Shown here one piece after another: positions 36,404-58,300 of a stretch of 64,000 nt of DNA. Within the stretch, counting starts at the first letter, position 1. Every line of letters starts with the position of its first letter. Both the position numbers and the translations under genes were made by a program. The notes under the pieces are model-generated. The model worked only from the letters and a program-made list of their open reading frames with translations, searched no databases and was not told the DNA's origin. This DNA comes from Chlorokybus atmophyticus (Eukaryota; Plantae; Mesostigma and Chlorokybus algae): contig RHPI01002402.1 in NCBI GenBank assembly GCA_009103225.1, positions 963,412-1,027,411 of the forward strand, written 5' to 3'.

Positions 36404-39400
36404 GGGTAGGGTCTGATGGTAACGAAAGTTATACTTAGGTCTCTGTATTAAGATTGCACGGACTAAGCCACGACAATCCAAATGAGTATCTTCAGGTGCA
36501 CGTCCGTTGATAATACTTGATTAGCCGACAGGCGAAACATTTTGCGACGAGGGGGGGTGGGGGGGTGGGATGTAACAGCGGAAATATCGTATCTTACATT
36601 ACTTAAAAAAATCATTGATTCTTATTAAGCAATAAATAATATTTATTATTTCAATTACATGTCAATGCATGCAACAGGAATTGACACCAATGCAAAAGAT
36701 ATACGAGCGTATCACGCTATCTTTATCATAGACAAGATTCATGAGCTAGTGAAGCGTTGCGTGCAAACTATATACGATATTATTGTGTGATTTTTGCATT
36801 CTATGTGCACATTTGTCATTCAAGTTGATGATTATAATATGTCATCATTGAATAATGCTTCTCATATTAAAATGCAAATGGCATTTATGGTATCACTGAT
36901 GCCGAGGCTATTCGCATGCAAGTCTCGTCTGAAGTAAGCTACAATAGCGCACACATTTGATATAAAAGCTGAAAGGCAAACACGCTCACCACGAGACTCG
37001 CGCTGGTTGCGCAACCAATAGTACTGGCACGGCACCGTAATCAAAAGCAATGACATATGCCAATTGGTGCCAGTCATGGTCACAAACTTGCATTGCCCGC
37101 ACTCGCATGACTGCGGTGCCAATCTTAGCAGCATTGTTACTATTGTTTGTGGTGGTGGTAGAGCAGGCTCACAAGTTCAATAAAAAAGGCAAGTGGCAAT
37201 ACGGACCAAAACGCTTTACACTAATATCGACACAACTTTACAAGACCCATGTGCACTTGAACAAGCCTTCCGTGCCGCTGATCATAAATGCACATGGTAT
37301 ATTATGTTTGAATTACTTTTCAAATCAAGTAAAGTTATTAAGTTGTCAATTTATAAGTCAAATTATATTTTTGTCATATCATCAACCCAACTTGTAATCG
37401 AAATGTGACTTGCATTTAAGGTTAATATATAGCTAATGGGAAGAAGCATAAACATCGCTGGTTTTAAAATCAAACCAGCATAGACATCACCGATTGTGAA
37501 TGCTTGCCAAGCATGCACAGTGGTTGAATGGTGGCCACTACGTCAGCAATAATTTAAGTAGAGCTGCCATTTCAATTGCAGCTGTTCTCAAGCCTTGTTT
37601 GGTATGTTTTGAACTTAAGCAAGAGTCTTCACTGGACTCACGTTGACAATGATGACCGATCGCATACTTGAAACGTGCGTGTCAGTAGACTAAGGTGTGC
37701 TGATTAAATGCATGCCGTATTATTCAACATGGAGAGCAGCGCCGTGGCTGCTGAGGCGAGGGAAGAGAAGCTTCTTGCTGCTGCATAACTTTCTTGTGCT
37801 AATCATTGCATGTTTAAGTCGCATGCACGCGTGCATATCACAAGCTACAACGGCTCATGTCTTCAGTGTGATGACTCAAGTAGCCGCCAACCCAGCCACT
37901 GCCTCGTCAAGTCCGCCTCGACTCCATCTCATGAGCTCTACTGCACCTACCCGTGTTGCTCTCTCAATGGCTGCGTGTGGGTAGGGAGACTTGTGTCGGC
38001 TTTACACTATTCGCTTTACTGTTCAAAGGTTGTCTTCAATATCTCTTGCATATGCAATTGTTAACTTAATTTCAACCAACTTTACCGTGTATGGATACCG
38101 ACTCCAGTATTTCATATATAAACATTATATTGCAATACATTATATTATAATACATTATCATTTAATAAAAGCATACGTCACGTATACGTTGGTGGTATGG
38201 CGTACGAACCCGCCGCCCGCTGCATAGTGCAATGTTGGAATTTTTTGGAGGTAAATATTAACCTTTTATGAACCGTTCAAGCAAGACATGTCATATAATA
38301 TACCTGCTTTGCAAATAAGATTGATCATGTAATACAAATCAAATTGCTTGCTCACGACACTCAGCTTTTCAGAGGACTCCTCTAAGAGGCAGTTTGGAAC
38401 TGCCTGTAACGTTGGGCATTTTACACTATACATGCCACATTGCCATATGAGTAATATCAGGTTGTATCGGCGAGGTCGTCTTTAATCCATCATCAAGCCC
38501 TTTGTAAAGGTTCGTTATCAGACAATGTTGAAAAGTTGATTCGTTCGACATCACGTTGTATCGTCTTACATGTCATCACGCACGACATGCATTGCATGTC
38601 GTAGATGCGAGTGTCACATCTTGCAGAGTTGTTGTTACTACCGGCATATAACTTGAAAGTGATCATGATGTCGCCCCAGATGTATATCAGTGTACTTCAC
38701 GTGCTAAAGCGAGCTCAAGGCTCACGATTTTTAATCGAGTTGTTGCCACACAAGTTCAGCGTGCGTGTGTATTGTGCAAATCAACTTTAAACTCATGTCA
38801 CCTGTTGAACCCACATGTTGTGTAAGCGTTTAAATTGTAATCATGCATTTCCGCACTTCATGTTAAACCAAGTCGAACCCACCAATGCCTCAAAATACAT
38901 CGAAGCAATTGAACCAATTACTTACTCAATTATTTTTTGTTGTATGTATTATCGCACGCTGCAGATCATATGTAACATATGATATGTAGCAATATGAGTT
39001 ACATACATCATATAAATACATAAAACCGTTAGCTAACAAGCTAAAAATGATGGAGTTTAGCTTGTATTACATAAGCACAAATTAAACACTTGCTTATGTT
39101 ATGCCTTATGTAACATACAAATCTTAATAAATCATGACATGATTATTAATAATACATGAGGCATACATAATGTCGTGTGTTTTGCATTATATTATTTAAT
39201 AACAACTGTTCGTCTCGCATAACTATTTATTGCGGTCAACACATTTCGTGCATTTTACATGAAATCAAGTGCGTTCACACATATAACTATCACATTCACG
39301 CAATCTATACAATGTACTGAATAATATATACTGTTCGGCACAAACTATAATATGTATCAAATAGTGTATACTATCATGCATCGTGCAAGCCATTGCAATG

Positions 39401-40365
39401 GCTTGCACGATTGCATATATAACTCTAGAAAACTACATGATACATTACTTGTGAGAAACGTCAAATTGTTGTGAACATCTATCGATGGTTCAAGCTGTGG
39501 TAATGTTTCAACGCCATTAGTGCAATCTCAAACATTCCAGTAGCTGAACCACATGCAGTTGCCCGTATTGTTACATCCGTGGCAAGTCACGTGACGCCTT
39601 AACAAGAACTGCCGCCGAAAAGCTGCCGGTTGCATGGCGCCTGAACGTATTAAGCCCTCAACTAGAAACTTAACTGCGGCGGGAATTTTAGTGCTTTTCA
39701 CAGAAGCCCGATTTCCCAGAACCCAGAAACTCCTTAGACGGACGTTTTGCTTGCTTCGGCGCATTGCCGAGAGGATTGGCGTGGTATTCGCTAAAAATCA
39801 CAGAACGCCATCGAGCTTATAAGGGTTTCTATCGAGCTCCGGTTCGCCTCGTCGAAACCGTTATTGGCGATTTGTCCTCATGCGCGACAGTTAGGGTTAG
39901 TTGGAGGGGGGTGGACAACGCGGCCGAATCAGCAGCCAATTGTGCATTGAATGTCACACACAGCGACTGTGAGGGGGAAAAATAAACAAGTACCTATACC
40001 CACTCTTCCCCGCCAGTGCCTTAGACAGTTATCACAGCGGGCTTCGCCGGCCCCAGGCAAGGCGGCGGCGGCGGCGGCGGCGGCGGAGGAGGAGGAGGAG
40101 CAGCTGGGGCTGCGCCCGTACAGGCGCCAGACAGGCCTTCATAGGCCAGGAGGACCGTCAAGGCTGGGATCGGCGCATGCTGGCCTGCTTGTGACAAGCG
40201 CCCGGAATTAGGGGTTGATTCTTCGAGGTGCATTGAGGGGCAGGCAGCAGCGATCCCCCCTGGTGCAGAGCATGTCATCCCCCCTGTAGTTGCCGTAGTC
40301 GCCCCCTTCCTCCAATGGAAGAAGGAAGCCGGAGAAGACGGCCCCCCCGCCCGGGGGGCGGCCAG

Positions 40366-43300
40366 ATGGCGAGCAAGGCGCTGTTGCTGTTGCTCTGTAC
40401 ACTCTCCGTTGCCTCCGGTAAGTGCATGCGTTGGTCGATTGCACTTGCAACTCAATGCCAAGTTATGATGTACGTATCACTTCCACTTAGAGCACTGTTC
40501 ACGTGTAATCGGCTCACTTGATACTACGCAGTTATAGTGGTGTTCCTGTAGAGATTTGTAACTAGCTGCTTGGTTGTTCATACTTACATGTAAAGCCATT
40601 CCCAAAATGTGTGCTCCATCCGTGTTGAGCTGCTTGGTGTTCGAATTTTCTCCAACAGGTAGCTGCTAAGTGGCTTCAGGTGCCCTTCAGTCTTGTCTCG
40701 CTCAGTTGTGCTACAAGAACCACCTTCATTTGCAGTTGTAGAAGTTTCAAAGCACAGACACATTTGTCAGGGAGCTATGCGTGTCGATAAAGGTCTCATT
40801 CTCTTGCACAAGTTGGCAGTGGCAGTGACTGACGGTGAGATCAATACACAGCCACGCATTTCCGCTACGGTACCATCTACTGGGAGCCCAAGCCGGGTGC
40901 GGACGCGTCAACGCAGTACCAGGTGCAGTTCACATTCCAGGCGGCGTTCCGCCGGGACTACACATGGGGCAAGTTCTTCGACGAGCTGTGGTCATCGGAT
41001 GGTGTGCACTGGCACTCGGGTGTGCCCGACACGCCCATCACCACTGTGCCACCCGCGAACATCATCACTGACCCGAACACCTTCCTCCAGGTGGGCCATC
41101 ACACTTATCTGAAGATGGTGCATATGTATGCTTGCTCACTGGCTTGACTCAGCACATATGAGCATCACTAGTTGCAGTGTTTACAGCCCNNNNNNNNNNN
41201 NNNNNNNNNNNNNNNNNNNNNNNNNNNNNNNNNNNNNNNNNNNNNNNNNNNNNNNNNNNNNNNNNNNNNNNNNNNNNNNNNNNNNNNNNNNNNNNNNNNN
41301 NNNNNNNNNNNNNNNNNNNNNNNNNNNNNNNNNNNNNNNNNNNNNNNNNNNNNNNNNNNNNNNNNNNNNNNNNNNNNNNNNNNNNNNNNNNNNNNNNNNN
41401 NNNNNNNNNNNNNNNNNNNNNNNNNNNNNNNNNNNNNNNNNNNNNNNNNNNNNNNNNNNNNNNNNNNNNNNNNNNNNNNNNNNNNNNNNNNNNNNNNNNN
41501 NNNNNNNNNNNNNNNNNNNNNNNNNNNNNNNNNNNNNNNNNNNNNNNNNNNNNNNNNNNNNNNNNNNNNNNNNNNNNNNNNNNNNNNNNNNNNNNNNNNN
41601 NNNNNNNNNNNNNNNNNNNNNNNNNNNNNNNNNNNNNNNNNNNNNNNNNNNNNNNNNNNNNNNNNNNNNNNNNNNNNNNNNNNNNNNNNNNNNNNNNNNN
41701 NNNNNNNNNNNNNNNNNNNNNNNNNNNNNNNNNNNNNNNNNNNNNNNNNNNNNNNNNNNNNNNNNNNNNNNNNNNNNNNNNNNNNNNNNNNNNNNNNNNN
41801 NNNNNNNNNNNNNNNNNNNNNNNNNNNNNNNNNNNNNNNNNNNNNNNNNNNNNNNNNNNNNNNNNNNNNNNNNNNNNNNNNNNNNNNNNNNNNNNNNNNN
41901 NNNNNNNNNNNNNNNNNNNNNNNNNNNNNNNNNNNNNNNNNNNNNNNNNNNNNNNNNNNNNNNNNNNNNNNNNNNNNNNNNNNNNNNNNNNNNNNNNNNN
42001 NNNNNNNNNNNNNNNNNCCCCCATGGGGTGCGCGAGCCCCTATGTGGCTCAACGTGCTTGCCATTGTCAATGACTCATCATGAGTGTGGTAAACTACTAT
42101 GTAACACGCACATCTCTTTGTGAGCAGTTCCCGTCAGGAACGACGTACGACAACCCAAACAACCCATACTACTTGCGGTTTCCAGTGGGAAGGGGTCTGG
42201 GTTCGGCGTTCCCGCTGCTGCCGGCGAGCGGCACAACGCAGGCGTGCCCTCACGGCCCCTGCCAGTGCACGTCGTACAACGATCCCGGTGACAGCCCCGA
42301 CTGCCCTAACGGCATTTCCGTTGGCACTGTGGTTCAGTTCTCTGAGCCGGTGCTGGCTGCGCTGTACCCGAGCGGCCTTCCTTGTGAAGCTGGACCAAAT
42401 GATCAGCCCGACTACTGCACGCCATGGTCGCAGGTTGGATGTTCAGCACTGTATTCAACACTTGCACTTTCGTTGCTTGCATTTGCACAGCGCGTTCACG
42501 GCTCATATGGACGACGAGTTTGGAGTGGGTTCTAAAGCACAGGTGCTGGCAGGTTTTTGGTTTCTTCTATGGTGATGGAGCCACGCAAGAAGTTGCGATG
42601 GCCATCAACCAGGTGGACTTCACCTCAAGCAAAGCCGGCAACTTCATTCGTGGCAAGGCCGTGTTCACGCATAACTATGCCACTGCAAAGAAGTCTGCCA
42701 CCGAGCCGTGGCTAGCCTACTTCACCGGAGGCAACCGTCTCGTCAACCTCAACAACAACCCGAATGGTCGCTTCCGTTTGGAAGTCACTGTCAACGTGCA
42801 GGGATCCAACAACTCACCGCGTCCCACACAGGTGTGCGACAGTTTTTCCAGTTGAATACCATGGCATGTACCAAGCTGCTTGAGAGCTTCTCACGTGCGT
42901 ACACCTTGTGATTGCAGATTCCCGTGTTGCCTCAACCCTATGTGGGCCGCGCTGACGGCATGGCAAAGTTCCAAATTGCTGCATTTGATCCGGACTTGAT
43001 CTCTCAAGGCGAGGGTGAACTTGCCAACCAGCCCATGTACTACCGGCTGGGTACCAGGATCGAGTAAGTGCGATGCCTATGTTTCAGTAAATCACAACAG
43101 CCGCAATAGTTACTTGACAGTCACTCACTGCACGATACACTGCTTTAGGTATGGTGCATTGATGGGTAACCCGGTTTTCAACCCTACAACCATGACGTGG
43201 TGGCCGTGGGTGTACGAGGCGCAGCGCGCTCAGTTCAACCCATCGTTGCCTGCCTGGGTCGACAGCGTGAACTACGCCACCAACCCAGATTACCTTGTCA

Positions 43301-46300
43301 TTGATGAACTGACGGGTATTGTGACTTGGGAGACGGGTATCGGCCCGTTCCAGATTGACGCTGCATCCTATCAGGATGGCAGTCCCGCTCCCAACCCTCC
43401 CCGTCAGCCCATGAAGTCCGGCTTCTACAACTTGGTGGTCATGGTGAGTGCTCTTGTCAAAGTCTCATGTACTTTTCTCAAGGTGAATATGTTGAAACAG
43501 TTGATGCGCAGGTTTCAGGTCCAGCAAATGATGCGTCCGCTGCTTACATGAACGGCCCGATGAAGGGCAACATCTCCACACCGCTGGACTTCCTCATCTA
43601 CCTTTACCCGTCGATGCACTACTGTGCGATCGATTGCCAGAATGTCCTCGGTGGCATTCAAACGTTCCGCGACTCCGACGGGTTCTACGGAGACCCCCAC
43701 ACGGCCCCTTTTGTCTACAACGGGCCGGGCACCGGTCAGTGCACCATCTGTGGAGGAGGTGAGGAGAACACCACTGTGGTCCGAGACTACACGCTCTGCC
43801 AACCGGTAGTGCCTGGACACACCCTGAGCGGCGCCGACAGCTGCCCAACTGGCACCAGCTGCCCCGGTGTTGTTGTCGATGCCAATGATGCCCTTCTGAA
43901 CAAAGACGTCGACTGCAGCAACTTGGCACAGACTCTGCCCAACCCTGTCTTGCCGCTGTCGATTGTTCCCGCCGTTCCTTCCTGCAAGATGAACACGTAA
44001 GTTGCAAAATGCTGTTCAATGTGTACTCCATTTCGGTTATGCAAGTGTAGACTCACGCATCCTACTTGCACAGTCCGCCTTACTGGGTGGAGTCGGTGGT
44101 TGCTGATGACGGTTTGACGCCCAAAAACGTGGAGTGCATCCCACCCACCTCCACTTGCCCCATTCCGCGAGCCTTGTTCCGCAAGCGCGTGGGCAGCACT
44201 GTCACCTTCGACCTGGTTGCGCGCGACGACGATGAGTGCGTGGAGCTGCAGATCATTGATGTGGGCCTCTACACGGGCATGGTTCTTGGCGACCACGTTC
44301 GCGATGATGAGCGACAGGTATACATACCATTGCTCACCTGGATTCACGTGTGCTAGTCATAAGTCATAGGCTCCACATTGGGATGATGTTTACACGTTGA
44401 TGATCTGATGAATGTTGCTGACTAACATGTCAACCTCTAAAGGTGCGTCGGACATTTACATGGGCGCCAATCTTTGAGACCATCAATGGTGTGGACACTG
44501 ATGTGCGCCCGAGGGATGTGGCGGTCTGTTTCCTAACCACGGACAACTACATCGTTTCCGAGTTCCGTTGCGTCCACATCACATTGTACGAGGACAAGCC
44601 GCTGTACTGGATGGATCAGCGCACGTGGCCGACTCCCGCATTGCACAGCGCGTTTGGCACTCTCCCCACGGCAGTGACACCCTTCAACAACACCAAGTTT
44701 TACGTCACCGCCAACAACACGCTGAGCTTCATGCTCGCCGCCAAGCAGGGCTCCGGTTACGGGCCCATCCGCATCAGCCTCAGCCAGGGAGAGCTCCCAG
44801 ATGGCGCCGAGTTCATCGACCATGTCAGCGATCCCTCCACAAAGACCTTTACATGGACGCCAGCCTCGTCGCAGGAGTGCGAATATCAGCTGTGCTTCAC
44901 CGCGCAGAACAGCCGCAGCCCGGCCGAGTGGGGATCCACACTGCAGGGCCCGTGCGACCCGGCTGATGGCACATACTGCGACGAGCGCTGCTACACCATT
45001 GTCGTCACCGACATGGCCGCCAGCTTTGAGTCCGGCGCATACGTGTTGGCGGATGAGGTCCTCCCGTCTCTCACGGCGGAGTGCGGCATGTCCATGGGCG
45101 CGTGGTTCTTGTTTGAGGAGGTGGGCGCCGCCGCGCAACCAATCCTTACAGCCGGTTACACCCCTGACAGCGATCTTGAATTCATTGTCGTGCACCAGCT
45201 CCTGTGGGAGCCCGTGTACCCTCTCATCTTTGATGATGGCATGAACAACAAGACCCTCGGCAGCTACTATCAGCTGGTGTACGTCAACGGCACCGATGTG
45301 AATCAGACAACCCTCAGCACTGAGCCTCTGTACTGCGACGGCGAGTGGCACTTTGCCATGCTCACCATTGATCCCGCCGGCCTGGTGACTATCTACTTGG
45401 ACGGCGTGCAGTACGTTCAGTATGCCATTGATAGCCGTGAGCACTACCCATGGTCAACGGAGTCTACCAACGCCGACATGATTAACGGCAAGGTCGGTGT
45501 GGTTGGTTCGGTGCTTGAAACCATTGGCGGCGCAGAAGGCCACTTCTTCATTGGCTCGGTGTACAACCAGACAACAGCCGGCCTGATTGATGAGGTCCGC
45601 ATCTACAGCAGGTCGCTGAACGCAGACGAGATCTTTGAGCGATTTACCCATCACCTGGATGCTTCAGAAGAGGTTGGCCTTGTTGGGTACTACAAGTTCA
45701 ATGAGGGCGCCCCCGACGGGTTCTACCAGTACCCGCAGACGGACGGTTCTGCACCGGCTAACCCTGGCACTGCGGAGTTCATTGTTGAGGCGACTAACTT
45801 TGTCATCGTGGACTCCTCGGGCTCAGGCAACAATGCTCGCTGGAACGGGACTGGCGTGTACACGTACGAGTGGACCCCAACTCCACTCACACAGACTTGC
45901 CCACTGCGCGTGTCAATTGAAGATGGCCCCCCTGTTGCACACGTTCACGGTGGACAGCAGTTGACGGTGACGGGAGTCAACTTTGCTCGCAGCAACTGGC
46001 TGAAAGTCAGGGTCGGGACGGAAGTCATTCCTGCCAAGTGGATCTCCAACACTAAGATCCAAGCCATCACTCCTGACTCCACACCATGCTCGCCCCCTGT
46101 TGATGCCAGCAACAACGGCTTTGACTTCAGTGACAACCAGGTATGTCAAAGCCCTTGTGCATGGTTGTGTGCGTATACGCAACCACTGTTAACATACTCC
46201 TCAAGCTTCTGTCAGTTGCTCATATAACGAATGTGATACTCAGGTTCCGCTGTACTATCTGGAAGAGGCCATGCGGTTCAATGGTGTTGATCAGTTTGTC

Positions 46301-49300
46301 AACTCTGACACTGTCAGCCATGACCTCAACAGCACGTTCACAGGATACTCTGTGGGTGGCTGGGTGTATCCACAGGTACTCCTTGATAGGTTTGGGTACA
46401 AGCACCTATTGAAACAAGTAGTAGTCATCAATGCTTACACATTGTTGTTGATGTGTTACAGAGCGGCATGGCCAAGGACAGCATCGTCTTCATGTGGACA
46501 AGCAAGCTGACCCCTGAGCCCCCCTCACCACCTCCGCCTCCGTCTCCTCCTCCACCCAGCCCACCGCCGCCCTCACCTCCTCCGCCTTCCCCACCTCCTC
46601 CTACCCCTCCTCCACCAAGCCCGCGCCCTCCACCTCCTCCACCACCTCCCTCACCTCACCCGCCACCTCCACCTTCCCCACCTCCTCCACAACAGGGTGG
46701 TCGTCGCCTTCTGGAGTTTGAGAATGTCATCAGCGCAGAAGGAATCGCAGTGTACTACCAAACCGACAACACCTTTGCATATGTTGATCGCACGCGCGAA
46801 GGCACGGTGCAGTTCCAGGCCGGAAATATCGTGGCTGCCGCTGATGAATGGCACTACGTCATGCTTACTGTCCACAGCGATGGGTCAGCCAGCCTATATG
46901 TTGATGGTCTCCTCGACACCAACATTACGACGCAGCTTTTCCCAGAGGCCATCCCTCTCTGTGAGCTCCACATCGGTTGCACCTATCAATTCCACCACGC
47001 GCCGCCGTCTCCCTCTCCACCTCCTCCCTCTCCACCCCCCCACCCCCCNNNNNNNNNNNNNNNNNNNNNNNNNNNNNNNNNNNNNNNNNNNNNNNNNNNN
47101 CCTCCCCCTCCACCACCCTCCCCGCCCCCACCCTCGCCGCCGCCTTCACCCCCACCACCCTCTCCTCCCCCTCCACCGAACCCGCCTCCGCCGGATCAGG
47201 GAGGCCGCCGCAGGCTGCTGGCTTACTCCGATGGCATTGGCCACTGCTTCAAGGGCATGGTGGAGGAGGTGACTGTTTGGAAGCGCGCGTTGACGGCGTG
47301 CGAGGTGCAGGCTATCATGTGGACCGGCAACGTCACACGCGGAGCCCTCAGCCCCAGCTGCAGCACTGTGCAGCCCGATGCAGTGAAGGATCAGATCGCG
47401 CGCTACGCGTTCAACGACTTTGTGGGCAGCATCGTATCGGACAGCTCGCGCTACAACAACCCAGCCTTGGCTGTTCATGCGTTCGACGGCGCCACCAATG
47501 AGGAGCCGCTCTGGACCATGACCACCGTGCCATTCTTGCCGCCTTGCGTTCTGCAAGCTGCCAAGGCACGTGACCAGACATGGTGCGCCCCCACCAACCT
47601 GTGGAGTTACGTGCCCAACGCCATTGACTCTGGCGCCTGGACTGGACCAACACCTGCACCCACACCGACTGGGTAAGTTGTCACAACTGGGCATGTGCAA
47701 TGCCTGGTTGTTAAACTGTTGAACTTACCACTGCCATATCTGCAGGTGCGGCGAGTACTACGAGAGTCTGTTGCTGCAGACCATCCCTATTGATGGCCAC
47801 GACCAAGTTACTATGCTCGGCTTTGGCTATGCAAAGAGTCAGTGGCTGCACTGCTCTCTTGAGGATGAGCTAATCCCGGCCACGTTTGTGGCTTTCGATC
47901 GCATCGAGTGCAACATACCTGGCCAAGACACGCCTGGAGAATACCGTTTAAGCATCACCAACAACGCCGCAGAGAAGGGCACACAAATCCCCTACCCATG
48001 CGAGAGTCAAAACACCACCGGCGCCGTCGTGCCAGTATACACCACTCCCGAGTGGCTGACAGTGATGGAGATGGCGTTGTACTTTGACGGTGCTGATGAC
48101 TATGTTGATTCGCCTTGGGCAAACAACGCCGCCTCCAACACTCCCTTCTCCGGCATCACGATGGGAGCCTGGTTCTACCCTATTGATGATAGCATCTGCC
48201 AGGAACAGCCGGTGCTTTGCTTCGCAGCTCCCTGTGCAGGCAACCAAGGCTCAGACGTCCCGCTGCAAGTATGCATCATGTACAAGAACCAGCGAGTGTA
48301 CTTGTACTCAGACATGGAGGTCTACTACGGAGCCGAGAACCTCAATTACAAATACAATGAAACAGTCAGCATTGAGGCGGTGATTGATGAGTGGCACTAC
48401 GCTGAGGTGGTCATCAACAACACGCAGATTGATCTGCCCACCGACATGTCTGACTTTGCATACGAAGCAGCACTCATGGTGGATGGCGTGAAGCTCAACT
48501 TTTCCATTCCATTTGCCATGGATGGTGTGCCTGAGGCCGGTGGCAACTTCTACGTTGGTGGTGTCTGGTGTGGCCTGGCACCACCATCACCATCACCTCC
48601 CCCTCCTCCGCCCCCACCATTCCCTCCTCCGCCCTCTCCACCACCACCACCACCTCCACCCACACCCAACCCGCCACCCCCACNNNNNNNNNNNNNNNNN
48701 NNNNNNNNNNNNNNNNNNNNNNNNNNNNNNNNNNNNNNNNNNNNNNNNNNNNNNNNNNNNNNNNNNNNNNNNNNNNNNNNNNNNNNNNNNNGTCGATCAG
48801 GGCTCCTCCCCCACCTCCACCTCCTCCACCTCCACCCCCACCTTCCCCACCCCCACCTGATCAGGGCGGTCGCCGCCGCTTGCTCGCGTCTCCCGGCGGC
48901 GGCAGCGGCGGCATCACCGACCTCGGCCACTGCAATGCAGACTCAAGGAAGTTTTTCAAGGGCTTCATTGATGAAGTGCGTGTGTTCGCCTCTCCAGACA
49001 TGGCTCGCGACACGCAGACCATGTTTGCACGCGTGCCTGAGAGCGAGTACGACACTGCGCCAATAGTGTACTATCGCATGAACCCGAGCACTGGTGACAG
49101 CCAGCAGTTGTACACGTTCACGCCCACTGAAGATGTGCAAGGTGTGCTCGACAGCTTCCGCACGGGCAACCAGGGCGAGCGCGAGCAGGGCACCGCTCAG
49201 TTCGTCATCAACAACGAGCCAGGCTACATGTACATCACCGCTCCATGGGAGGCTTCTTCAACATCGTACCTCAGTGAAGCTGCTACCATGCAGCTTGATG

Positions 49301-52300
49301 GTGGTGACTCTGTACTGGTTGAAGGCTTCAACTTTGCAAAGAGCCAGTGGCTGAAGTGCGCACATTCATTTGTCAACAACTTGCCAAGCAGCAACACGAC
49401 CACAATTGTCACGGCCGTCAAGCTCACAGCTGCAGCTCTGCCTGCAGCGGAGAACGCCGATAATGAGTTCTTCATGTCGAGCATTGTGGGCTACGATGGT
49501 ATGAGCGCGGAGTGCGAGTCTGCTCCTGCAGATGCACCTGGCCAGGTGGTCCTGCAGGTGGTGAACCCAAAGTCCACTGACGACTTTGTGTCGCTCTCAT
49601 ATGCCGAGAAGGTGTTGGAATTCCAGGGCGACCGTACCACAACTTCCGCAGAGTTGATTGGTGGCTACGCCGACGAGGACGACACCCTCACGCTGACCTG
49701 CCCCGAAGGCCTGCGCATGGAGAGCCTGCAATTCGCCAGCTTTGGAAGACCAGCGAACAAGTGCAACAATGACGTGCGTATCAACTGCGACGCCTCGACC
49801 ACTGATGTACCATGCGACTTCACCGCGTTCAACATCAACCCACAATGCGACAGCAACAGCAGCACCGTGCACGAGATTGTGGAGGTGATGTGCATCGGCC
49901 AGAGCACCTGCAGCATCCCTGCGGTGGTGTCTCTGTTTGGCGACGCGTGCCCGCGCGACAAGAAGTGGCTCTCCGTTGCAATGCAGTGCACGGACAGGTG
50001 GGCGGCAATGGACTTTGTGGACTTCAAGAGCGTGCTCCCTGCGCTGAGTTCATCGGCGTACTCTTTCGGCGCGTGGGTTTATCCCTATGAGAACAGCCAG
50101 CTGCAGTCCGTTATTGCGTTCGGCAGCCTGGGCGACAACCACAATCGTGCCGTGCTGCAATGGAAGAGTTCTGGCCTTGATGATCTCATTGGCACCTTCT
50201 ACTACTACGATGACCACATCCACGACGTTGGCCTGAAGTACCCTGATGGAAGCGACAGATATGTTGCAACTGGGCAGTGGCATCATGTCTTTATCACAGG
50301 TAATGTGCATGCAATATTGGGTGTATATACACTGCATGCATGCTGATAACGTTTAAGCTGATACCAATCGTGTCTCACAGTCAATGAGACCAATGAAGGC
50401 ACACTATACATCAATGGAATGGCCACTTCAACGTTTGCAACAGTCTCCCGGCCGGACACGTCCGCCGACGGCACTCTATACATTGGCATGAGCCTTGATG
50501 ACGACCACTATCCGTCTGAGTACTTCTCAGGCCTTATCGATGAGGTAAGGAGCCATTCAACCACCTCATGGTTAACAACATCTACGTCACATGTACCTGA
50601 CAAGGAGGTTGTTGTGCGCAGGTCCGTGTTTACGATTACGCACTCACGGCAGAGGAGGTGATGTCCTTCGTGTGTGGCAGCGATGTCGCCGAGCCCGTAG
50701 GCCACCTGCGTTTCAATGACATTGATGAAACTCTGGGAATTGTATCCGGTGGTGGCGTGCTGGCGCAGTCGGAGTCTTCCAACTGGGACAACACCACCCT
50801 GAGCTTTAAGGGCACGGGGCTTAAGTCCGTCCACGCCGCCGGCACGTGGTTCGGTGTGCCATGGTTCCCCGCTGTGCCAATCAGCATCCAAGACACGTCC
50901 GCTACCTCAGACGTGTACCCGCAGACCTCCGGCGCGGTCAAGAACGGCACTGAGGTCACCATCATGGGCATCAACTTTGCGGGTACCGCATCGGTTCTGC
51001 TTAATGGTGAGGTGCTGGCGTCAACATGGACCTCCAATTCGGAAATGGTGGTCACGTTGCCTGCCGGCACAATGCCCGATGACCTGACTGTCATCAACTC
51101 GGCTATCTGCGGCGACCCCATCAACTCGCTCACGTACGAGCGTGAAGTCATCCTTGAGGATCTCGTGTACGGCCTTTGCGCTTACTACCCCTTCAACGGC
51201 GACGCCAAGGATGCTAGCGGTAACGGCAACCACGGCATGGCTGTTGAGGCAGTCCTTACAGAAGGTATGTAGCATTATGCATTCGTCTGAACACACTATG
51301 ACGGTTTGGGCTTATGTCATGCATCGTTGATGTGTGTTGCGCACAATTGCGCACAATTCTTACCTGCAATGTTGGAATGTGCAGACAAGGATGGACGGAG
51401 CAACAGCGCTTACAGGTTCCTCGACGACGTAGCGGCTGGTGTGTACATCACGCCGTGCGATGGTGCAGCCACAGTCAGCATGTGGGTGTACTTTGACGAC
51501 GTGGCCTTCCCGACCTACAGCGCCTGCGATGGATACGAGCAGGGTGCTTGCCAGGCAGGCAACGCCACCATCAACGGGGCTTGGAAGTTTGTTGCCGTCA
51601 CTGTTGATGCCACAGAGACCCGCTTGTACCTCAACGGCTACCAGATCAGCAACAGCTCTGCATACGCCGCTCCTGCCCTGGAGGCCTTGACCATGGGTGT
51701 CATTGGCCGCACGCTGCATGGCGCTGTCGACGAGGTGCGCATTTACAACCGCATCCTCAGCGAAGCTGAGATTGCAAAGATCCACTTCACTAATGACTAC
51801 GCTCTCGAGTTTGGTGCCGGCCAGTACGTGTCCATCGCACCGAGCGGGCCGACCCCTCAGGGAAGCAGCGGCCTCATCGCAGTCTACACCGGCGGTAATG
51901 CGCAGGTGACTGAGCTCATTACCGACATCAACGCCGAGTGGGGCCTTGCGGCGCCAGCTGGCATCAGCGTCCTCGACGCGTGGTCCGTGGAAATCACCGG
52001 CTGGGTGTTCGCGCCCACCACTGACACGTACAACTTCTCTGTGCGTGCCGATGACGCCGTTGTGCTCTCGGTCAGCGAAGTGCTGCTGGTCAATGACACC
52101 GCTTATCAGGGTGATGCCCGCGTGCTGTCTGGCAGCATTGAGCTGACCGGCCCTCAGTGGTACAACCTTTGGTTTGCTTACACGGACAAGACAGATATTG
52201 CCTCTTACCAGCTGCGCTGGTCGACGACGTCCGGCTCCATCGCCAATGAGACGGTGCCCAAGTACTACCTTCGCTCTGGTGCCGGGCCTTTCACGGTGTC

Positions 52301-55300
52301 TGCGTGGGTTTACCCGTACACTGTTGACGGCCACCAGACCATCCTTGGCCAGACTTTGGATAACAGCTACACTGGCTTTGGCTTCGGCATTGAGAATGGC
52401 GGCGTGTCCGTTGCTGTCTACACTGGCTGCTCTTGCGAGCGCGACACCAACGTCAAGTGCAACGCATACAGGACGCTGTCGAGCTGGAAGGCTGCTGTCG
52501 TGCCCAACATGTGGCAGTACATCACTGCCGTGTACGACGGGTCCTCTTGGGCCGTCTACATCGACGGCATCCTCAAGGACTGGACCAACTATGATTCGGT
52601 TGTCTACTACATGGGCAGCGGCCAAGACTTTATGCTTGGCCGTGAGAACTTCGGCAATTTGGCGGAGGGCGCGTTCTACTACACAGAGCCGTACGAGCGC
52701 GTCTTCCATGGCCTCATCCACTCCGTCAAGATGTACAATGTAGCCATGACCGATGTTGATGGCATCGCCGCTGGAATGAACTGCGCGCCGAAGGCAGCGG
52801 AGAACAACATGACTCTGTGGCTGAAGCTCGATGAAGGCCTGGGCACCGTTGTGCTAGACTCTAGCAATGCTGGTGTCTTTGCTGCTGGCGCCCTTCAAAT
52901 GAGCCCCAAGCCCGCTGCCTTTGAGTTCTGGGTCAACACCACTGTTGGCTGCGGCAACTGGACTGAAAACAACGATATGCATTCTGTCACAGGTAACTTT
53001 GCTCAAGTGTATCTCTTCCTATGTACTTGTAAGTTGTACTTGGTACGTGTGTTTGCATCTGCTAACAATTCATTCTCTCTCAGATGCTTCTATCAGCGAT
53101 GTGGTTGGCACAGCTCTTACCGAAGTGGTGGCTGGCGAGTGTGGCGTGTTTACGATTACGTCGAGGGATGCTTGCGGCAACAGGAGGAAGGTTGGTGGCG
53201 ACATGTATAAGGTGTCCTTGATCGGCCCTCTTCATCTGCACTCCAACTCGTTGGAGCTGGACGTTGAGGACCTCAATGATGGCACTTACTCGGTGACATT
53301 CAGCGCCACCATTAGCGGCTACTACTACATTGAGGTACATAGTCGCGGCTGTTGTCATGTATTTTTGCTCATCACAGGAAGCATGCAGTATTGACATATG
53401 TTGGTTGGCAGGTGGAGCTTGATGGTGACGCAGTCTACGCCGACAAGACTTTCATCCATCCCAATGTGGCTGACCCCTCTCAAACATACTTTTATGTGCC
53501 GAGCAACAACACATTAGGCGTGAACGGCATTGAGACGGCTTGGGCTGGTGTGCCTGTGTCTTTCATGGCCCAGGTGTGTATCTTTCTCAAGCTTTGAGGT
53601 TCTTCTACAGGTATCATGTGTAGTTGAAATTCTCACATGCCATACTGTCTTGCAGACTGTGGACGCATACGGAAACCTTCGCACAACTGGCGGTGACAGC
53701 GATTGGTCCGTGATCATCACTGGACCTTATGACTTCTCCGCGGACGTGGTCGACAACGATGACGGCACTTACACCTTCACGTATCTTTCCAAGATCAAGG
53801 GCCAGTACATGATGAATGCGACATTCTGCGGACAACCCATCTGCCAGGTAACAGTCAGCAGACTGCTCATGTGGCTGATGGTTCTTCCATTCATGATGCT
53901 GTTACATATGTGGTATACGCATGCAAGTGTCTGAGCTGCTGTTGCTTGCAGTACGGCGGCATGGCCTGCTGTGGAGGTACAAAGGCAGCACGCAGCGCGT
54001 GCACGCTGTCCATTCGGCCGGCGGGTGAGAGCTGCTTGTTCCCGCTGGTGGTGTCTGATGGCAGTGCCCTCAGCACCAGCTTCGATACCCCCTACGCGAC
54101 GGTTCCGGACAGCGATCTGCTGGACCTGGAGTCGCCGTTCACGGTGATGGCGTGGGTCTGGAAGCACACGCCTCCGGTGCCCTCACCACCACCTCCGTCT
54201 CCACCTCCGCCGTCTCCTCCCCCGCCTCCCCCACCGAGCCCTCCACCTCCCTCGCCACCGCCCAACCCGCCTCCTCCCAGCCCCTCCCCGCCTCCTCCAA
54301 GGCCGCCTCCCCCATCTCCACCTCCACCCTCACCCCCACCCCNNNNNNNNNNNNNNNNNNNNNNNNNNNNNNNNNNNNNNNNNNNNNNNNNNNNNNNNNN
54401 NNNNNNNNNNNNNNNNNNNNNNNNNNNNNNNNNNNNNNNNNNNNNNNNNNNNNNNNNNNNNNNNNNNNNNNNNNNNNNNNNNNNNNNNNNNNNNNNNNNN
54501 NNNNNNNNNNNNNNNNNNNNNNNNNNNNNNNNNNNNNNNNNNNNNNNNNNNNNNNNNNNNNNNNNNNNNNNNNNNNNNNNNNNNNNNNNNNNNNNNNNNN
54601 NNNNNNNNNNNNNNNNNNNNNNNNNNNNNNNNNNNNNNNNNNNNNNNNNNNNNNNNNNNNNNNNNNNNNNNNNNNNNNNNNNNNNNNNNNNNNNNNNNNN
54701 NNNNNNNNNNNNNNNCCCACCACATCCGTCACCACCCCCACCCTCGCCTCCACCTCCGTCACCTCCACCCCCCGAGGCTGGAGGCCGGAAGCTGCTTTCC
54801 CTGGACACGTTGCTCGACACGCCCTACGAGTACATCCTCTCCAAGCAGTCCGAGCACAGCAACAAGGGCTACTGGTTTGGCATGAAGCAGCTCCCGACCT
54901 GGGGCACGTTCAATGTGACTGTCGGCATCTACGTTGGTGCGGAGACTTTCCGCGTCCTCGACCAGGTCATTGACCTCGAGTACAACAGCTGGCTGCACCT
55001 CGCCGCCACGTACAACGGCACCGAGCTGCGCTTCTACATCAATGGCGTGTTGACGGCCAATGCCACATACGACTACCGTGAGGTCATGCTGCAGAAGCGT
55101 AACAACCAGCCGCTTCGCATTGGCAAGGGCTTCAACGGCTACGTCGATGAAGTGAAGCTCTTCAGCCGAGTGCTGTCCGCATCGCAGATTGACTATGCTG
55201 CCGCATGCACGTGCGACAAGGCCAGCCTCGCGAAGCAGGACAAGTCGTTAATTGCCTTCTACCGCTTTAACGATGCTACTGGTTACGTTGTTCGGGACTC

Positions 55301-58300
55301 GAGCCTGTCAGGCCACCACGGCATGATTGGCATGGAGTTCACAGAAGTCGATCAGGGCCACAACGCCCACATCACCTGCCCCGTGGGCACCACTGTCACC
55401 GACGTCCTGTACGCCAACTACGGCACCAACCAGGGCGTGGGCGGCGCGTACATGGTGGACGACTGCAGCAGCGAGAACTCTATGCTCGTGGTTCGCGCGG
55501 CCTGCCTTGGTGAGAACTCGTGCATGGTCACAGCCAGCAACGATGCCTTTGGCGGAAACCCCTGCACCCACGTCACCAAGAGTCTGGCCATCAGCGTCCT
55601 GTGCAGCTCCCCAAGCAAGAACCTGTGGGCCGTCGACCAAGCACCCTCCCTCATCGGCGTGCCAAAGGTTGGACCCAAGCCCTGGTGCCTTGATGGCCGA
55701 TGCAAGACCTGGAGCATCCGCAAGGCCGTGTCCGGAGAGCCAATCACCTTTGGCATGACCGGCATCGACAGCTGCGGGTTCAAGGAGATCTATGGCGGGC
55801 AGCCATACTCTGTCATGATGACCTACCCTGATGAACTTGTGACGGAGGTTGATGAGCAGCACACCTGCGTGCCCACATGGATAGCGGGCAGCACTTTGGA
55901 CGGCTCCTTCGCATGGACAGGAATGGACAAGTACAACCTTTCCATCACCCCAACCAAGGCCAGCTCCGCTGTGCTCGACATCATGCTCGACGCCAAGCGG
56001 GCCTTCTCGTACAAGCTGACCGTCCTGCCCGGCCCTGCCGCAGCTGAGACCAGCGCTGTGCTCGCCAGCCACGACAGGAGCATCCAGGCAGGTGTCTCCA
56101 CATCTATTGTTGTTCTACTGTTGGACGTCAACTCCAACCTCGTGCCCGTCAACAACGCTCTGTTGGAACGCTTGATGCTCGACGTTACTGGCGGCGACAG
56201 CGTGTACGGCGCGACGGGGGTTGGTGCTGAGACCAGCACTGCCGAGATGTTCCTGATGTTCCCTCAGTCTGGCGTCTACTCGGTGGACGTGAAGCTGTGC
56301 GATGAGGAGGACCACACCAGCTGCGAACTGATCGACCACTTGGTCTTCACCGTGTCTGCGTGGGTGCCGAGGGAGGTCGACAGTGTCACTCTGCCAGCCG
56401 AACGCTTCGAGCACTCCGCTGCTGTGGTTGGCTCTGAGGTGATCGTATTTGGCGGTGCTGGCAAGGATAAGTCCTACCTCGGTGAGACGTGGAAGCTCAA
56501 CTTGGGCGACATTAGCTGGGAAGAGTACTTTGCTTTCCGCGCCCCCGTGACAGTGTCTGGAGACATCGTCGCATCATCGTACAACCTAGAGGTTGCTGTG
56601 GACACGTTTTCGCTCATTGTGGCGGGCAACATGCGCTCCGACTGCGGTGACGTTCGTTTCGTCACCGCTGAAGGCACCTCGCTGCCATACTGGGTGGATC
56701 CTCTGCCCGGTTGCGGAGCAAGCAACACCGTCTTCTGGGTCAAGGTGGCCTCTGATGAGGACTTCTTCATGTACTATGGCTCGCAGACTTCCATGTCAAC
56801 CTCAACCGAGACCATCTTCGAGCTTTTTGAGGGCTTCGAGTACAACGCCAGCATCTTCAACAACCACTGGAGTCTGAAGGACGACTCTGCCTGCTCACCA
56901 GGCAGCATCAATGTTGGAAGTGAAGCTGCATTTGTTACTTCGGATGAGGTGGCGCTCCAGGGTACCCGCGCGCTGCGCGTTGACACACAGCTCTTGTCCG
57001 GAGGCTCCATCCAGCTGGACATCAGCAGCGCTATCGAGGACTTGCCGTCATACCGCTTCAAGGCATACCTGTACGATGGCAACTGTGCCGACGCCACTCA
57101 CTACATCAGTCCTGACGTTGACGGCAACGAGCAGTGCGACGTCGACAACAGCAAGCCTCGATTGCCAATGTACAACGCGCTCGGCCTGTACACGAGTGCC
57201 GCGCGCGACATGTATGCGATGTCTTACCCGTGGAGGTCGGCAGGCGCGCAACGTTCACCCGGCTGGCACAGCCTTGCTTTCTACAGCAACAACACGGCTC
57301 TGACCATGTATGTTGATGGCATGGCCGCAAGGCTCTCCAGCAGCAAGCCCAGCACTCTCAACGAGAACATCTTCATCCGTGGCGGCATGTTTGCCAACTT
57401 CTCGGAAGGCAACGCTTACTGGGATGCCATCATCGTCACGGAGTACCTGCCGGGTGTCAATGCGTCCGTGGATCTCACAGCAGCGGAGGCTGTCCTTTAC
57501 AACCCGTCGGCTACCGAGTGGGTTATGGTTGAGACAGATCACACGCCTCCAGCAAGGCAGGGACATAGCTCAGTCGTTTATGACTCCGCTGTGTACATCT
57601 TTGGTGGCGAGCGCAGCGCGTATGAGTACAATGACCTCTGGAAGTACTCCCATGAGAATGAGGTGAGTGATAGAACAAAGATACACATGCGTTGGTCTGT
57701 GAGACATTATTGATGATGATGAGGATGATGATGATGATGCTTTCCTAACATGCTTTTGTGTTGCAGGACTGGACCTTTGTGACGCTCATCACCAACACCA
57801 CACCTGCTGGAAGGCACGACCACAGCGCCGTTGCCTACAACGGCTCCATGTACGTGTTTGGCGGCCGCTCCCCGCAGCCGCTGGGAGACTTCTGGAAGTT
57901 CACTTTCAACAACGGCTCCTGGGACATGTTGACTTCACCCGAAATGGAGGGCCTGTCTGCGCGCTTTGGGCACTCTGCCGTTGTGGTCGAGGACAGCATG
58001 TACGTGTACGGCGGGTACAGCCAGATGGGTGGCTTGATGGCAGACATCTGGCAGTACAACTTCACCACGTCGATGTGGGCATCAGTTGAGCCCACAGTGA
58101 ACGGGACGAGTACATATGTTGATGACTCTGCAATCCTGTTGCCCGCAATAAACGTCCCCGAGGCCCGCTTTGCCCACACGGCCGGCGCCTACGGCGGCGC
58201 CATGTACATTGTTGGTGGCGCGGGCGGACTTCGCATGCGCACGGCATTTGATGACGTGTGGAAGTTTGACGTTGCATCGAAGCAATGGCAGCCTCTCTAC

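What the first reader, a model, noticed from the sequence alone, without database searches (positions are those of the whole stretch)
46519..54797. Four extensin-like Pro segments, each ending in GGR(R/K)LL, inserted inside LamG domains
Seen: (SP3-5)n tracts end in QQGGRRLL (46696), DQGGRRRLL (47200), DQGGRRRLL (48865) and EAGGRKLL (54780). They sit within LamG folds, not between them: two shortly after the xxWV strand, and two between the IG/VGG strand and the FKG..EV strand. One LamG carries two. Known: RRLL/RKLL is the site-1 subtilase (S1P/SBT6.1) motif in plant pectin methylesterases and RALF23, and SPn tracts are hydroxyproline-glycosylated. Inference: cleavage would leave a nicked but folded lectin domain displaying free-ended glycosylated rods, a programmable self-assembling coat. 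This is the best candidate for an undescribed system here.
Basis: partly seen in the sequence, partly recalled or inferred. Interest (0 to 1): 0.85.

Follow-up and report, generated by a model that had tools for sequence, protein, structure and literature searches.

The report
Cleavage-tagged proline rods inside lectin domains
A giant secreted protein of the early-branching plant-lineage alga Chlorokybus carries four long proline-rich stretches inside three folded lectin-type domains, each ending in the same short tag that looks like a protease cutting site, and the tag's survival in relatives separated by very deep evolutionary time suggests this style of protein trimming is much older than land plants.

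Summary
The window is Chlorokybus DNA (gene Chrsp66S07199 and upstream models). Four in-frame Ser-Pro(3-5) tracts end in GGRRLL, GGRRRLL, GGRRRLL and GGRKLL. They lie in three different surface loops of three LamG domains. Spliced RNA contigs remove the neighbouring GT..AG introns but keep tract 1, so the tracts are coding.

New here:
- The Mesostigma ortholog has tracts 1-3 plus GGRRLL at the same loops.
- The Chara ortholog keeps only R-S-L-L at sites 1 and 2, after a short loop or a Ser/Thr-rich spacer.
- So R-x-L-L is the conserved element and the spacer is variable.

An AlphaFold model of the Mesostigma domain shows one complete LamG sandwich (Z 19.4), with both tags in low-confidence segments. 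The tags fit the published site-1-protease consensus, and a paper's supplement lists a SKI-1-like subtilase in Chlorokybus.

Cleavage itself is unproven, and the "self-assembling coat" idea has no support. Gap 2 is out of frame as written, and none of the three gaps was bridged.

The scan noted the same motif on other pieces of this genome (s1-183771, s1-181032, s1-078981). I found no paper describing it. Verdict: new variant of a known kind, moderately high interest.

The parts
40366..57710 (+). Giant multi-exon gene for a secreted LamG/TIG/SUEL-lectin/PA14/filamin/Kelch/DUF2341 array protein. It continues 3' of 57710 into Kelch repeats.
   Evidence: Exons 44422-46140, 46244-46375, 46462-47672, 47746-50299, 50381-50544, 50622-51264, 51385-52992, 53084-53334, 53412-53573, 53656-53847 and 53952-57710 are all bounded by GT..AG. 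Pfam domains. A signal-peptide-like start MASKALLLLLCTLSVASG lies near 40366. P0001 = jgi/Chlat1 Chrsp66S07199 matches the 3' part at 100%.
46265..47322 (+). LamG domain L1, split by one intron (46376-46461) and carrying two proline tracts.
   Evidence: It is 54% identical over 329 aa to Mesostigma P0010:1332-1650.
46516..46689 (+). Proline tract 1, (SPPPP)n of about 58 aa, fully sequenced. It sits in the loop after strand IVFMWTS.
   Evidence: Kept in spliced RNA contigs of X1 and X2. Imperfect at DNA level: period 15/30, 65-80% matches.
46690..46713 (+). Motif 1, QQGGRRLL.
   Evidence: The Mesostigma ortholog has RGGRRLLQ and the Chara ortholog FFGRSLLE at the aligned position.
46999..47193 (+). 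Proline tract 2 (contains gap 47049-47100). It sits in the loop between strand LHIGC and strand FKGMVEEV.
   Evidence: RNA contig X2 record 10 covers 47101-47652 with an in-frame 9-nt deletion at 47164.
47194..47220 (+). Motif 2, DQGGRRRLL.
   Evidence: Mesostigma has AGGRRLLQ. Chara has KAERSLLA after a Ser/Thr-rich spacer of about 100 aa.
48065..49029 (+). LamG domain L2, carrying tract 3.
48578..48858 (+). Proline tract 3 (contains gap 48684-48791, across which the frame shifts 1 to 0 as written). It occupies the same loop as tract 2: FYVGGVW ... FFKGFIDEV.
   Evidence: The Mesostigma ortholog P0010:2053-2113 has an uninterrupted tract here.
48859..48885 (+). Motif 3, DQGGRRRLL.
   Evidence: Mesostigma has EFGGRRLLQ and Cymbomonas MRHLLQ at the aligned position. 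Chara has no motif here.
54066..55205 (+). LamG domain L6, carrying tract 4.
   Evidence: Pfam Laminin_G_3 at 72.6 bits covers profile 44-150 after the tract.
54168..54773 (+). Proline tract 4 (contains gap 54343-54715, in frame as written). It follows strand FTVMAWVWKH directly.
   Evidence: Direct orthologs lack an insert here. Paralogs P0028 (Chlorokybus) and P0078 (Mesostigma) carry a tract plus motif in the same loop.
54774..54797 (+). Motif 4, EAGGRKLL.
   Evidence: P0028 has EAGGRKLLQ and P0078 has AGGRRRLLQ.

Best explanation
The gene encodes a giant secreted matrix protein of Chlorokybus built from lectin-type modules. Three of its LamG beta-sandwich domains carry long Ser-Pro(3-5) spacers inserted in surface loops.

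The functionally conserved element is the short tag at the C-terminal end of each spacer, (G)G-R-(R/K)-(R)-L-L. Its core, R-x-L-L, is a processing site of the site-1-protease (SKI-1 / SBT6.1 / 'SBT7') type.

Inferred mechanism:
- The domain folds in the ER while the loop is still an unmodified, flexible chain.
- In the Golgi a subtilase cuts after the second Leu, at the point where the chain re-enters the fold. The best candidate is the SKI-1-like enzyme Chrsp66S07212.
- The LamG becomes a nicked two-chain domain held together by its beta-sheets.
- The spacer, probably hydroxylated and arabinosylated, stays attached by its N-terminal end only.

Shown: the tracts are translated, lie inside the domains, sit in predicted flexible segments, and carry a peptide-level conserved motif at orthologous positions in deeply diverged streptophyte algae.

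Inferred: cleavage, the identity of the protease, glycosylation, and persistence of the nicked domain.
For: 1. Coding status. Spliced RNA contigs retain tract 1 while removing three flanking GT..AG introns.
2. Intradomain placement. Shown by Pfam coordinates, the custom HMM, the paralog alignment and the AlphaFold2 model of the 54%-identical Mesostigma domain P0010:1325-1655. About 172 residues spread over model residues 1-331 align to one contiguous LamG/pentraxin domain at Z 19.4, rmsd 2.5 A.
3. Accessibility. Both motifs in that model lie in the pLDDT<50 segments 109-123 and 287-296.
4. Peptide-level selection. The four copies share amino acids but differ at synonymous codon positions. The tracts are imperfect at DNA level.
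5. Deep conservation. Mesostigma has GGRRLL at the three orthologous loops. Chara has GRSLL and ERSLL at sites 1 and 2, with a short or Ser/Thr-rich spacer. Cymbomonas has MRHLLQ at site 3.
6. Association. In 353,562 residues of relatives, 8 of 12 proline tracts end in the motif. GGR(R/K)+LL-type motifs occur 9 times, 8 of them after a proline tract.
7. Enrichment. RxLL is over-represented against shuffles. The window protein has 2+2 observed against 0.1+0.3 expected. Mesostigma proteins have 5, 8 and 5 against about 1.
8. Motif without tract. GGRKLL directly follows the WV strand in Mesostigma P0078 at residue 1604.
9. Match to known sites. The motif fits the S1P consensus R-(R/K/H)-L-(A/L/S/T/F) (PMC2685025) and the PME processing motif RRLL/RKLL (PMC13477033).
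10. Timing in plants. SBT6.1 acts in the cis-Golgi, before proline hydroxylation (PMC7162652).
11. Enzyme present. A SKI-1-like subtilase, Chrsp66S07212, is listed for Chlorokybus, and SBT7 is reported throughout Archaeplastida (PMC6713707).
12. Secretion. A signal-peptide-like N-terminus is present.
Against: - There is no protein-level evidence of cleavage in any of these algae.
- R-x-L-L is a short motif. Some instances in relatives are structural strand residues, for example NRALLQW. The single Cymbomonas match could therefore be chance.
- Chara lacks the motif at site 3. Direct orthologs lack any insert at the tract 4 loop.
- The invariant Gly-Gly before the Arg residues in Chlorokybus and Mesostigma is not a known S1P requirement and is unexplained.
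- I did not inspect the Chlorokybus SKI-1-like enzyme's sequence, and the genome also holds many other subtilases.
- Three of the four tracts contain unread gaps. Gap 2 is out of frame as written.
Confidence: 0.6

Rival explanations
1. The tag is not cleaved. It is a structural or recognition element at the base of a closed proline-rich loop. It could be a basic/hydrophobic boundary that stops prolyl hydroxylases and arabinosyltransferases, a hinge (Gly-Gly), or a docking site for acidic wall polysaccharides or another matrix protein.
For: The conserved Gly-Gly and the two to three basic residues would suit a hinge plus an anionic-polymer contact. AlphaFold accommodates both uncut loops in one folded domain. 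No cleavage data exist.
Against: Chara keeps only R-S-L-L, without Gly-Gly, without the dibasic pair and without the proline tract. This points to the R-x-L-L core rather than a boundary for proline-modifying enzymes. The motif also occurs without a tract (P0078 residue 1604) and outside LamG domains (P0028 2181 and P0078 3021). That pattern is typical of a portable protease site.
Confidence: 0.22
2. The tag is a dibasic prohormone-convertase (kexin/furin-like) site with a following amidation signal (Gly-Arg-Arg). The cut falls after Arg-Arg, the basic residues are trimmed, and the proline rod ends in an amidated residue.
For: G-(K/R)(K/R) is the classical amidation signal screened for in Chlamydomonas secreted proteins, and green algae possess PAM and convertase-like enzymes (PMC6313938). 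Three of four copies have GGRR and the fourth has GGRK.
Against: The invariant Leu-Leu is unexplained by this model. Chara sites are GRSLL and ERSLL: a single Arg, and no Gly in the second. Mesostigma P0078 788 reads RRSRSLL. Whether Chlorokybus has PAM was not tested.
Confidence: 0.1
3. The tracts are not part of the mature protein. They are unconventional introns or exitrons with polypyrimidine-CAG ends, or artefacts of assembling (CCN)n repeats around gaps.
For: Three tracts end in pyrimidine-rich DNA followed by CAG|G. Three of four contain assembly gaps, and one gap is out of frame as written. RNA contigs show spurious joints between different tracts (table 5).
Against: Two independent spliced contigs run through the whole of tract 1 with 0 gaps while excising the true introns. 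There is no GT at the 5' side, and the tract-to-tract joints have non-canonical ends and 21-24-nt sides. Gene models of another species (Mesostigma) and a Chlorokybus paralog read through equivalent tracts in frame. Synonymous divergence of the motif shows selection on the peptide.
Confidence: 0.03

Closest known systems
Pro-domain processing motif RRLL/RKLL of land-plant type I pectin methylesterases, and the S1P (SBT6.1) sites of RALF23, CLEL6 and bZIP17/28
   Same: Same tetrapeptide (RRLL, RKLL). Same lineage (Streptophyta), same compartment logic (secretory pathway, Golgi) and the same candidate enzyme class.
   Different: In the known cases the site separates a pro-region from a mature domain or releases a peptide. 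Here it lies inside a folded domain, at the end of a long low-complexity spacer, and several sites occur per protein. Cleavage is not shown here.
Two-chain legume lectins and concanavalin A maturation (own knowledge, not tested here)
   Same: A ConA-like jelly-roll that is cut in an internal surface loop after folding and stays assembled as a nicked domain. In ConA an internal glycosylated spacer is removed.
   Different: A different protease (asparaginyl endopeptidase) and different sites, with a short spacer rather than a 60-200-aa Ser-Pro rod. No homology beyond the superfamily fold is claimed.
Notch S1 (furin) cleavage in the heterodimerisation domain, and SEA/GAIN-domain nicking in animal surface proteins (own knowledge)
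   Same: Cleavage in a disordered loop inside a folded extracellular domain in the Golgi, yielding a non-covalently held two-chain domain.
   Different: Unrelated folds and organisms. Furin or autoproteolysis rather than an S1P-type site. No proline-rich insert.
Long chimeric extensins / HRGPs of green algae (e.g. volvocine pherophorins)
   Same: Ser-Pro(3-5) glycomodule tracts joined to globular lectin-like domains in secreted algal matrix proteins. Pherophorins are also proteolytically processed (PMC10762512; PMC6313938).
   Different: In pherophorins the rod lies between two complete globular domains. Here it interrupts a single domain and ends in a fixed tag. The tracts have no Tyr cross-linking motifs.

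Membership tests
LamG / Laminin_G_3 (concanavalin A-like lectin/glucanase superfamily) | Match to Pfam PF13385 above the gathering score | tested here: met
   L6 C-terminal part scores 72.6 bits against a cut-off of 27.6. The L1 pieces score 26.0 and 17.4 bits separately because the domain is split. The custom HMM joins the pieces at consecutive profile positions.
LamG / Laminin_G_3 (concanavalin A-like lectin/glucanase superfamily) | A single jelly-roll beta-sandwich formed by the segments on both sides of the inserts | tested here: met
   AlphaFold2 model of the 54%-identical Mesostigma ortholog domain: mean pLDDT 72, core blocks 80-92. VIA-align gives Z 19.4, rmsd 2.5 A, with 171-173 residues across model 1-331 aligned to one contiguous PAPP-A LG / PTX3 pentraxin domain. 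The window's own domains were not modelled, because of introns and gaps.
Classical cross-linking extensin | Repeated Ser-Pro(3-5) motifs | tested here: met
   Tract 1 holds about seven SPPPP units.
Classical cross-linking extensin | Tyr-containing cross-linking motifs (YXY, VYK) between the SPn units | tested here: not met
   There is no Tyr in any sequenced part of the four tracts.
Classical cross-linking extensin | Hydroxyproline and Hyp-O-arabinosides on the tract | not testable with these tools
   Needs chemistry. The literature reports only that SPPPP is hydroxylated and arabinosylated in chlorophytes and streptophytes generally (PMC5371791).
Substrate of site-1 protease (SKI-1 / SBT6.1 / 'SBT7') | Motif R-(R/K/H)-L-(A/L/S/T/F) | tested here: met
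   RRLL three times and RKLL once. Consensus taken from PMC2685025.
Substrate of site-1 protease (SKI-1 / SBT6.1 / 'SBT7') | Substrate enters the secretory pathway | tested here: inconclusive
   A signal-peptide-like start MASKALLLLLCTLSVASG lies near 40366, but no predictor was run. An 828-N gap (41190-42017) lies between it and the verified exons. The extracellular-type domains are consistent with secretion.
Substrate of site-1 protease (SKI-1 / SBT6.1 / 'SBT7') | Site lies in an exposed, unstructured segment | tested here: met
   In the ortholog model both motifs fall in the pLDDT<50 stretches 109-123 and 287-296, just before the re-entering strands.
Substrate of site-1 protease (SKI-1 / SBT6.1 / 'SBT7') | The organism has the enzyme | tested here: inconclusive
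   The supplement of PMC6713707 lists Chrsp66S07212 as Peptidases_S8_SKI-1_like. I did not examine its sequence or catalytic residues. It is not in this window.
Substrate of site-1 protease (SKI-1 / SBT6.1 / 'SBT7') | Cleavage after the P1 Leu, dependent on the enzyme | not testable with these tools
   Needs N-terminomics or a cleavage assay.
Dibasic convertase site with amidation signal G-(K/R)(K/R) | Gly followed by a basic pair, conserved in orthologs | tested here: not met
   Present in Chlorokybus and Mesostigma. The Chara orthologous sites are GRSLL and ERSLL.
Spliceosomal intron / exitron | GT..AG ends and removal from RNA | tested here: not met
   There is no 5' GT. Tract 1 is retained in spliced contigs of two samples.

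The most novel reading that the evidence does not exclude
R-x-L-L processing by an S1P-type subtilase may be an ancient streptophyte way of maturing extracellular matrix proteins. It would already have been in place before Chlorokybus, Mesostigma and Chara diverged, and so would be older than its known land-plant uses (PME, RALF, CLEL).

In these algae it would nick LamG lectin domains inside their own loops. A stiff, glycosylated Ser-Hyp rod, or a mucin-like spacer in Chara, could then hang from a folded domain by one end only. The result would be a multi-chain lectin array bearing free-ended glycan rods.
Probability: 0.35. Interest if true: 0.75.

Novelty: new variant of a known kind. Interest (0 to 1): 0.62.

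Why it matters
Why it would matter if the tags are cut:
- S1P-type processing of wall and matrix proteins would date to the base of the plant lineage. So far it is known in plants from pectin methylesterases and peptide-hormone precursors.
- It would give the conserved SKI-1-like subtilase of algae its first candidate substrates.
- It would add a plant-lineage example of a folded extracellular domain deliberately nicked in a loop, a design otherwise known from legume lectins, Notch and SEA/GAIN domains.

Practical use for annotation: the gene models of these giant proteins are broken at the proline tracts, because assembly gaps fall there. The motif marks where the broken models should be joined.

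The idea is directly testable with standard proteomics on culturable algae.

Tried and rejected
Rejected readings:
- Intron or exitron. The polypyrimidine-CAG ends suggested it, but spliced contigs retain tract 1 and there is no 5' GT.
- Recent microsatellite expansion. TRF shows only 65-88% matching units with mixed Pro codons.
- Amidation-signal reading. Weakened by the Chara sites.

Things that led nowhere:
- Bridging the three gaps with RNA contigs failed. Depth is zero at 48636-48749, and only chimeric tract-to-tract joints appear.
- The first homologous-protein search found only the 3' gene model and distant LamG proteins, because of its length window.
- Looking for the SKI-1-like gene inside the window found nothing.
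- Literature searches for any description of proline-tract-plus-RRLL inserts, or of these LamG giants in Chlorokybus or Mesostigma, found nothing relevant.

Steps not possible with these tools:
- Modelling the window's own domains with and without inserts. Spliced or insert-deleted sequences have no reference, and three tracts contain N. The complete Mesostigma ortholog domain was modelled instead.
- A proteome-wide count of the motif in Chlorokybus.

Full report
**Origin and gene.** The window is eukaryotic, with short GT..AG introns and about 53-57% GC in genes. A protein search identified the 3' part of the gene as jgi/Chlat1 Chrsp66S07199 of Chlorokybus at 100% identity. I rebuilt eleven exons between 44422 and 57710, all with GT..AG borders. 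The product holds He_PIG, TIG, several Laminin_G_3, two SUEL lectin, PA14, filamin-like, DUF2341 and Kelch modules. A signal-peptide-like start lies near 40366. The public gene model is cut into pieces by the assembly gaps: P0001 starts only after gap 3.

**The observation.**
- Four Ser-Pro(3-5) tracts end in QQGGRRLL (46690-46713), DQGGRRRLL (47194-47220), DQGGRRRLL (48859-48885) and EAGGRKLL (54774-54797).
- In all six frames of the window, GG[RK]{2,3}LL occurs nowhere else.
- The six shared codons differ between copies at nearly all third positions, and even at first positions (CTG/TTG, CGC/AGG).
- The tracts are imperfect at DNA level, with 65-88% matching units.
- This is conservation of a peptide, not a recently copied piece of DNA.
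- A fifth proline tract in another gene on the minus strand (15616-15663) ends ADGGCATV, without the motif. So the motif is not automatic for every tract.

**Gaps, tested first.**
- Gaps 1 (52 N) and 3 (373 N) keep the frame as written.
- Gap 2 (108 N) shifts the frame from 1 to 0, so its real length would have to be 3n+1.
- No RNA contig bridges a gap.
- Continuity is supported only indirectly. Each gap is flanked by the N- and C-terminal parts of one LamG domain. The Mesostigma ortholog reads through the tracts equivalent to those holding gaps 1 and 2 without interruption.

**Are the tracts translated?** The four public runs that hold this stretch are labelled only 'RNA?'. Their contigs nevertheless skip 46141-46243, 46376-46461 and 47673-47745 exactly at GT..AG, so they are spliced RNA.
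- X1 record 2 (99% or more identical) runs 46241-46371 joined to 46458-737, with one mismatch and no gap. That covers all of tract 1 and its motif.
- X2 record 9, from a relative about 5% diverged, does the same out to 47010 with no gap.
- X2 record 10 covers the right half of tract 2 and its motif, with a 9-nt in-frame deletion at 47164.
- The only joints touching tracts connect one tract to another, with non-canonical ends and 21-24-nt sides. These are assembly chimeras of a repeat.
- The intron reading is rejected for tract 1.

**Placement in the fold.**
- Pfam coordinates are split by the tracts.
- An alignment of this gene's own LamG domains, with inserts replaced by a marker, places the tracts as follows:
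  - tract 4 directly after the FTVMAWVWKH strand;
  - tract 1 one strand later, after IVFMWTS;
  - tracts 2 and 3 between the hIG/VGG strand and the FxGxIDEV strand.
- An HMM built from that alignment gives breaks at positions 34/36, 46/51 and about 153 of 186.
- So three loops are used, not two.
- The window's domains have no single reference, because of introns and N. I therefore modelled the complete 54%-identical Mesostigma domain P0010:1325-1655 with a 74-row LamG alignment.
  - The model has mean pLDDT 72, with the sandwich strands at 80-92.
  - Both motifs sit in the lowest-confidence stretches, 109-123 and 287-296.
  - VIA-align matches 171-173 residues, spread over model residues 1-331, to one contiguous LamG/pentraxin domain (PAPP-A LG, PTX3) at Z 19.4, rmsd 2.5 A. 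Foldseek agrees.
- The inserts are loops of one complete domain.

**Relatives.** An exhaustive profile search with the large 3' exon returned 158 representatives. The source names of the 19 I looked up place them in these taxa:
- Mesostigma viride (P0010, P0078, P0142/P0159)
- a Chlorokybus paralog (P0028)
- Chara braunii (P0011)
- Cymbomonas (P0013)
- Pycnococcus / Pseudoscourfieldia and Prasinococcus
- metagenomic sequences and, at lower scores, two bacteria (Hymenobacter, Pedosphaera)

In 353,562 residues of relatives there are twelve proline-rich tracts, and eight end in the motif. The motif occurs nine times, eight of them after a tract.

Alignment of orthologous domains shows the following.

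| Site | Chlorokybus (window) | Mesostigma | Chara | Cymbomonas |
|---|---|---|---|---|
| 1 | QQGGRRLLE | RGGRRLLQ | FFGRSLLE (short loop) | not compared |
| 2 | DQGGRRRLLA | AGGRRLLQ | KAERSLLA, after a ~100-aa Ser/Thr-rich spacer | not compared |
| 3 | DQGGRRRLLA | EFGGRRLLQ | none | MRHLLQ |
| 4 | EAGGRKLLS | no insert in the direct ortholog | no insert | no insert |

- At the tract 4 loop, paralogs carry a tract plus tag: P0028 has EAGGRKLLQ and P0078 has AGGRRRLLQ.
- In P0078, GGRKLL also follows a WV strand with no tract at all. RRSRSLL ends a short Pro-rich loop at the tract 2/3 position.
- RxLL is enriched over shuffles in the Chlorokybus and Mesostigma proteins. Some hits elsewhere, such as NRALLQW, are ordinary strand residues, so single matches such as the Cymbomonas one must be read with care.
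- The conserved unit is therefore R-x-L-L at the point where the chain re-enters the fold. The spacer in front of it varies in length and composition.

**Mechanism.**
- RRLL and RKLL are the processing motifs of type I pectin methylesterases (PMC13477033). They fit the S1P consensus R-(R/K/H)-L-(A/L/S/T/F) (PMC2685025).
- Plant SBT6.1 cuts such sites in the cis-Golgi, before proline hydroxylation of the same precursors (PMC7162652).
- Xu et al. 2019 report the SKI-1-like clade throughout Archaeplastida. They report the ordinary plant subtilases SBT1-5 only from Coleochaetophyceae onward (PMC6713707).
- Their supplement lists Chrsp66S07212 as the Chlorokybus SKI-1-like enzyme.
- My inference is as follows. 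The LamG folds with a still-flexible loop. The subtilase cuts after Leu-Leu. The spacer then remains attached by its N-terminal end to a nicked, still-assembled domain.
- A rod-like glycosylated Ser-Hyp tract of 60-200 residues would be hard to keep as a closed loop. This gives a rationale for a cut at its base, but that is reasoning, not data.

**Rivals.**
- An uncut hinge or docking element. I cannot exclude this, and it would explain the Gly-Gly.
- A dibasic-plus-amidation site. The Chara sites weaken this.

**Comparison with what is known.**
- Chimeric extensins are known in green algae (PMC10762512), and pherophorins are processed (PMC6313938). In those the rod lies between domains.
- Nicked ConA-fold lectins, Notch S1 and SEA/GAIN domains are functional parallels from my own knowledge.
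- Six literature searches found no description of this arrangement.
- Within this scan the same motif was noted on other pieces of the genome, so it is a genome-wide habit rather than a property of this gene alone.

**Verdict.** The cleavage-site interpretation is plausible and is strengthened by deep positional conservation, but it remains unproven. The 'self-assembling coat' is unsupported. I rate it a new variant of known kinds (S1P-type processing sites; chimeric extensins).

Noticed in passing
outside the window (same scaffold, gene model Chrsp66S07212): The Chlorokybus SKI-1-like (S1P-type) subtilase listed in the supplement of PMC6713707 carries a gene number only 13 models away from this gene (Chrsp66S07199) on the same scaffold. 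Its first residues are not encoded in the window.
   Followed up: partly
window 15616-15663, minus strand: A different gene has a proline tract (PPPPPPPSPPPPPP) that ends ADGGCATVAPDC, with no R-x-L-L tag. Not every tract in this genome carries the motif.
   Followed up: no
P0011 (Chara braunii GBG58751.1) residues about 1735-1855: At the loop where Chlorokybus and Mesostigma have proline tract 2, Chara has a Ser/Thr-rich low-complexity spacer of about 100 aa ending KAERSLLA. It looks like a mucin-like replacement of the extensin-like rod.
   Followed up: partly
P0028 residue 2181 and P0078 residue 3021: A further tag pair, DKRRSLLGLDLPEGLYV (Chlorokybus paralog) and SASRRHLLGDGPPEGMYV (Mesostigma), appears conserved outside any LamG domain.
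   Followed up: no
window 47164 (RNA run X2): A related Chlorokybus sample has a 9-nt in-frame deletion inside tract 2. Tract 1 has the same length in that sample, with 0 gaps.
   Followed up: no
window 36000-42017: A low-GC stretch (34-42%) lies just upstream of and around the gene's first exon. An 828-N gap (41190-42017) lies between the signal-peptide exon and the verified exons.
   Followed up: no
relatives P0010-P0164: The closest full-length relatives all come from early-branching green algae: Mesostigma, Chara, Cymbomonas, Pycnococcus/Pseudoscourfieldia and Prasinococcus. No land-plant or zygnematophyte protein turned up among the 19 proteins whose sources I looked up. Most of the 158 hits were not checked for origin.
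   Followed up: partly
window 48792-48803: Directly after gap 2 the sequence GTCGATCAGGGC reads SIRA before the proline run resumes. The same 12-mer occurs in an ordinary coding stretch at about 55348. It may be an assembly-edge oddity.
   Followed up: no
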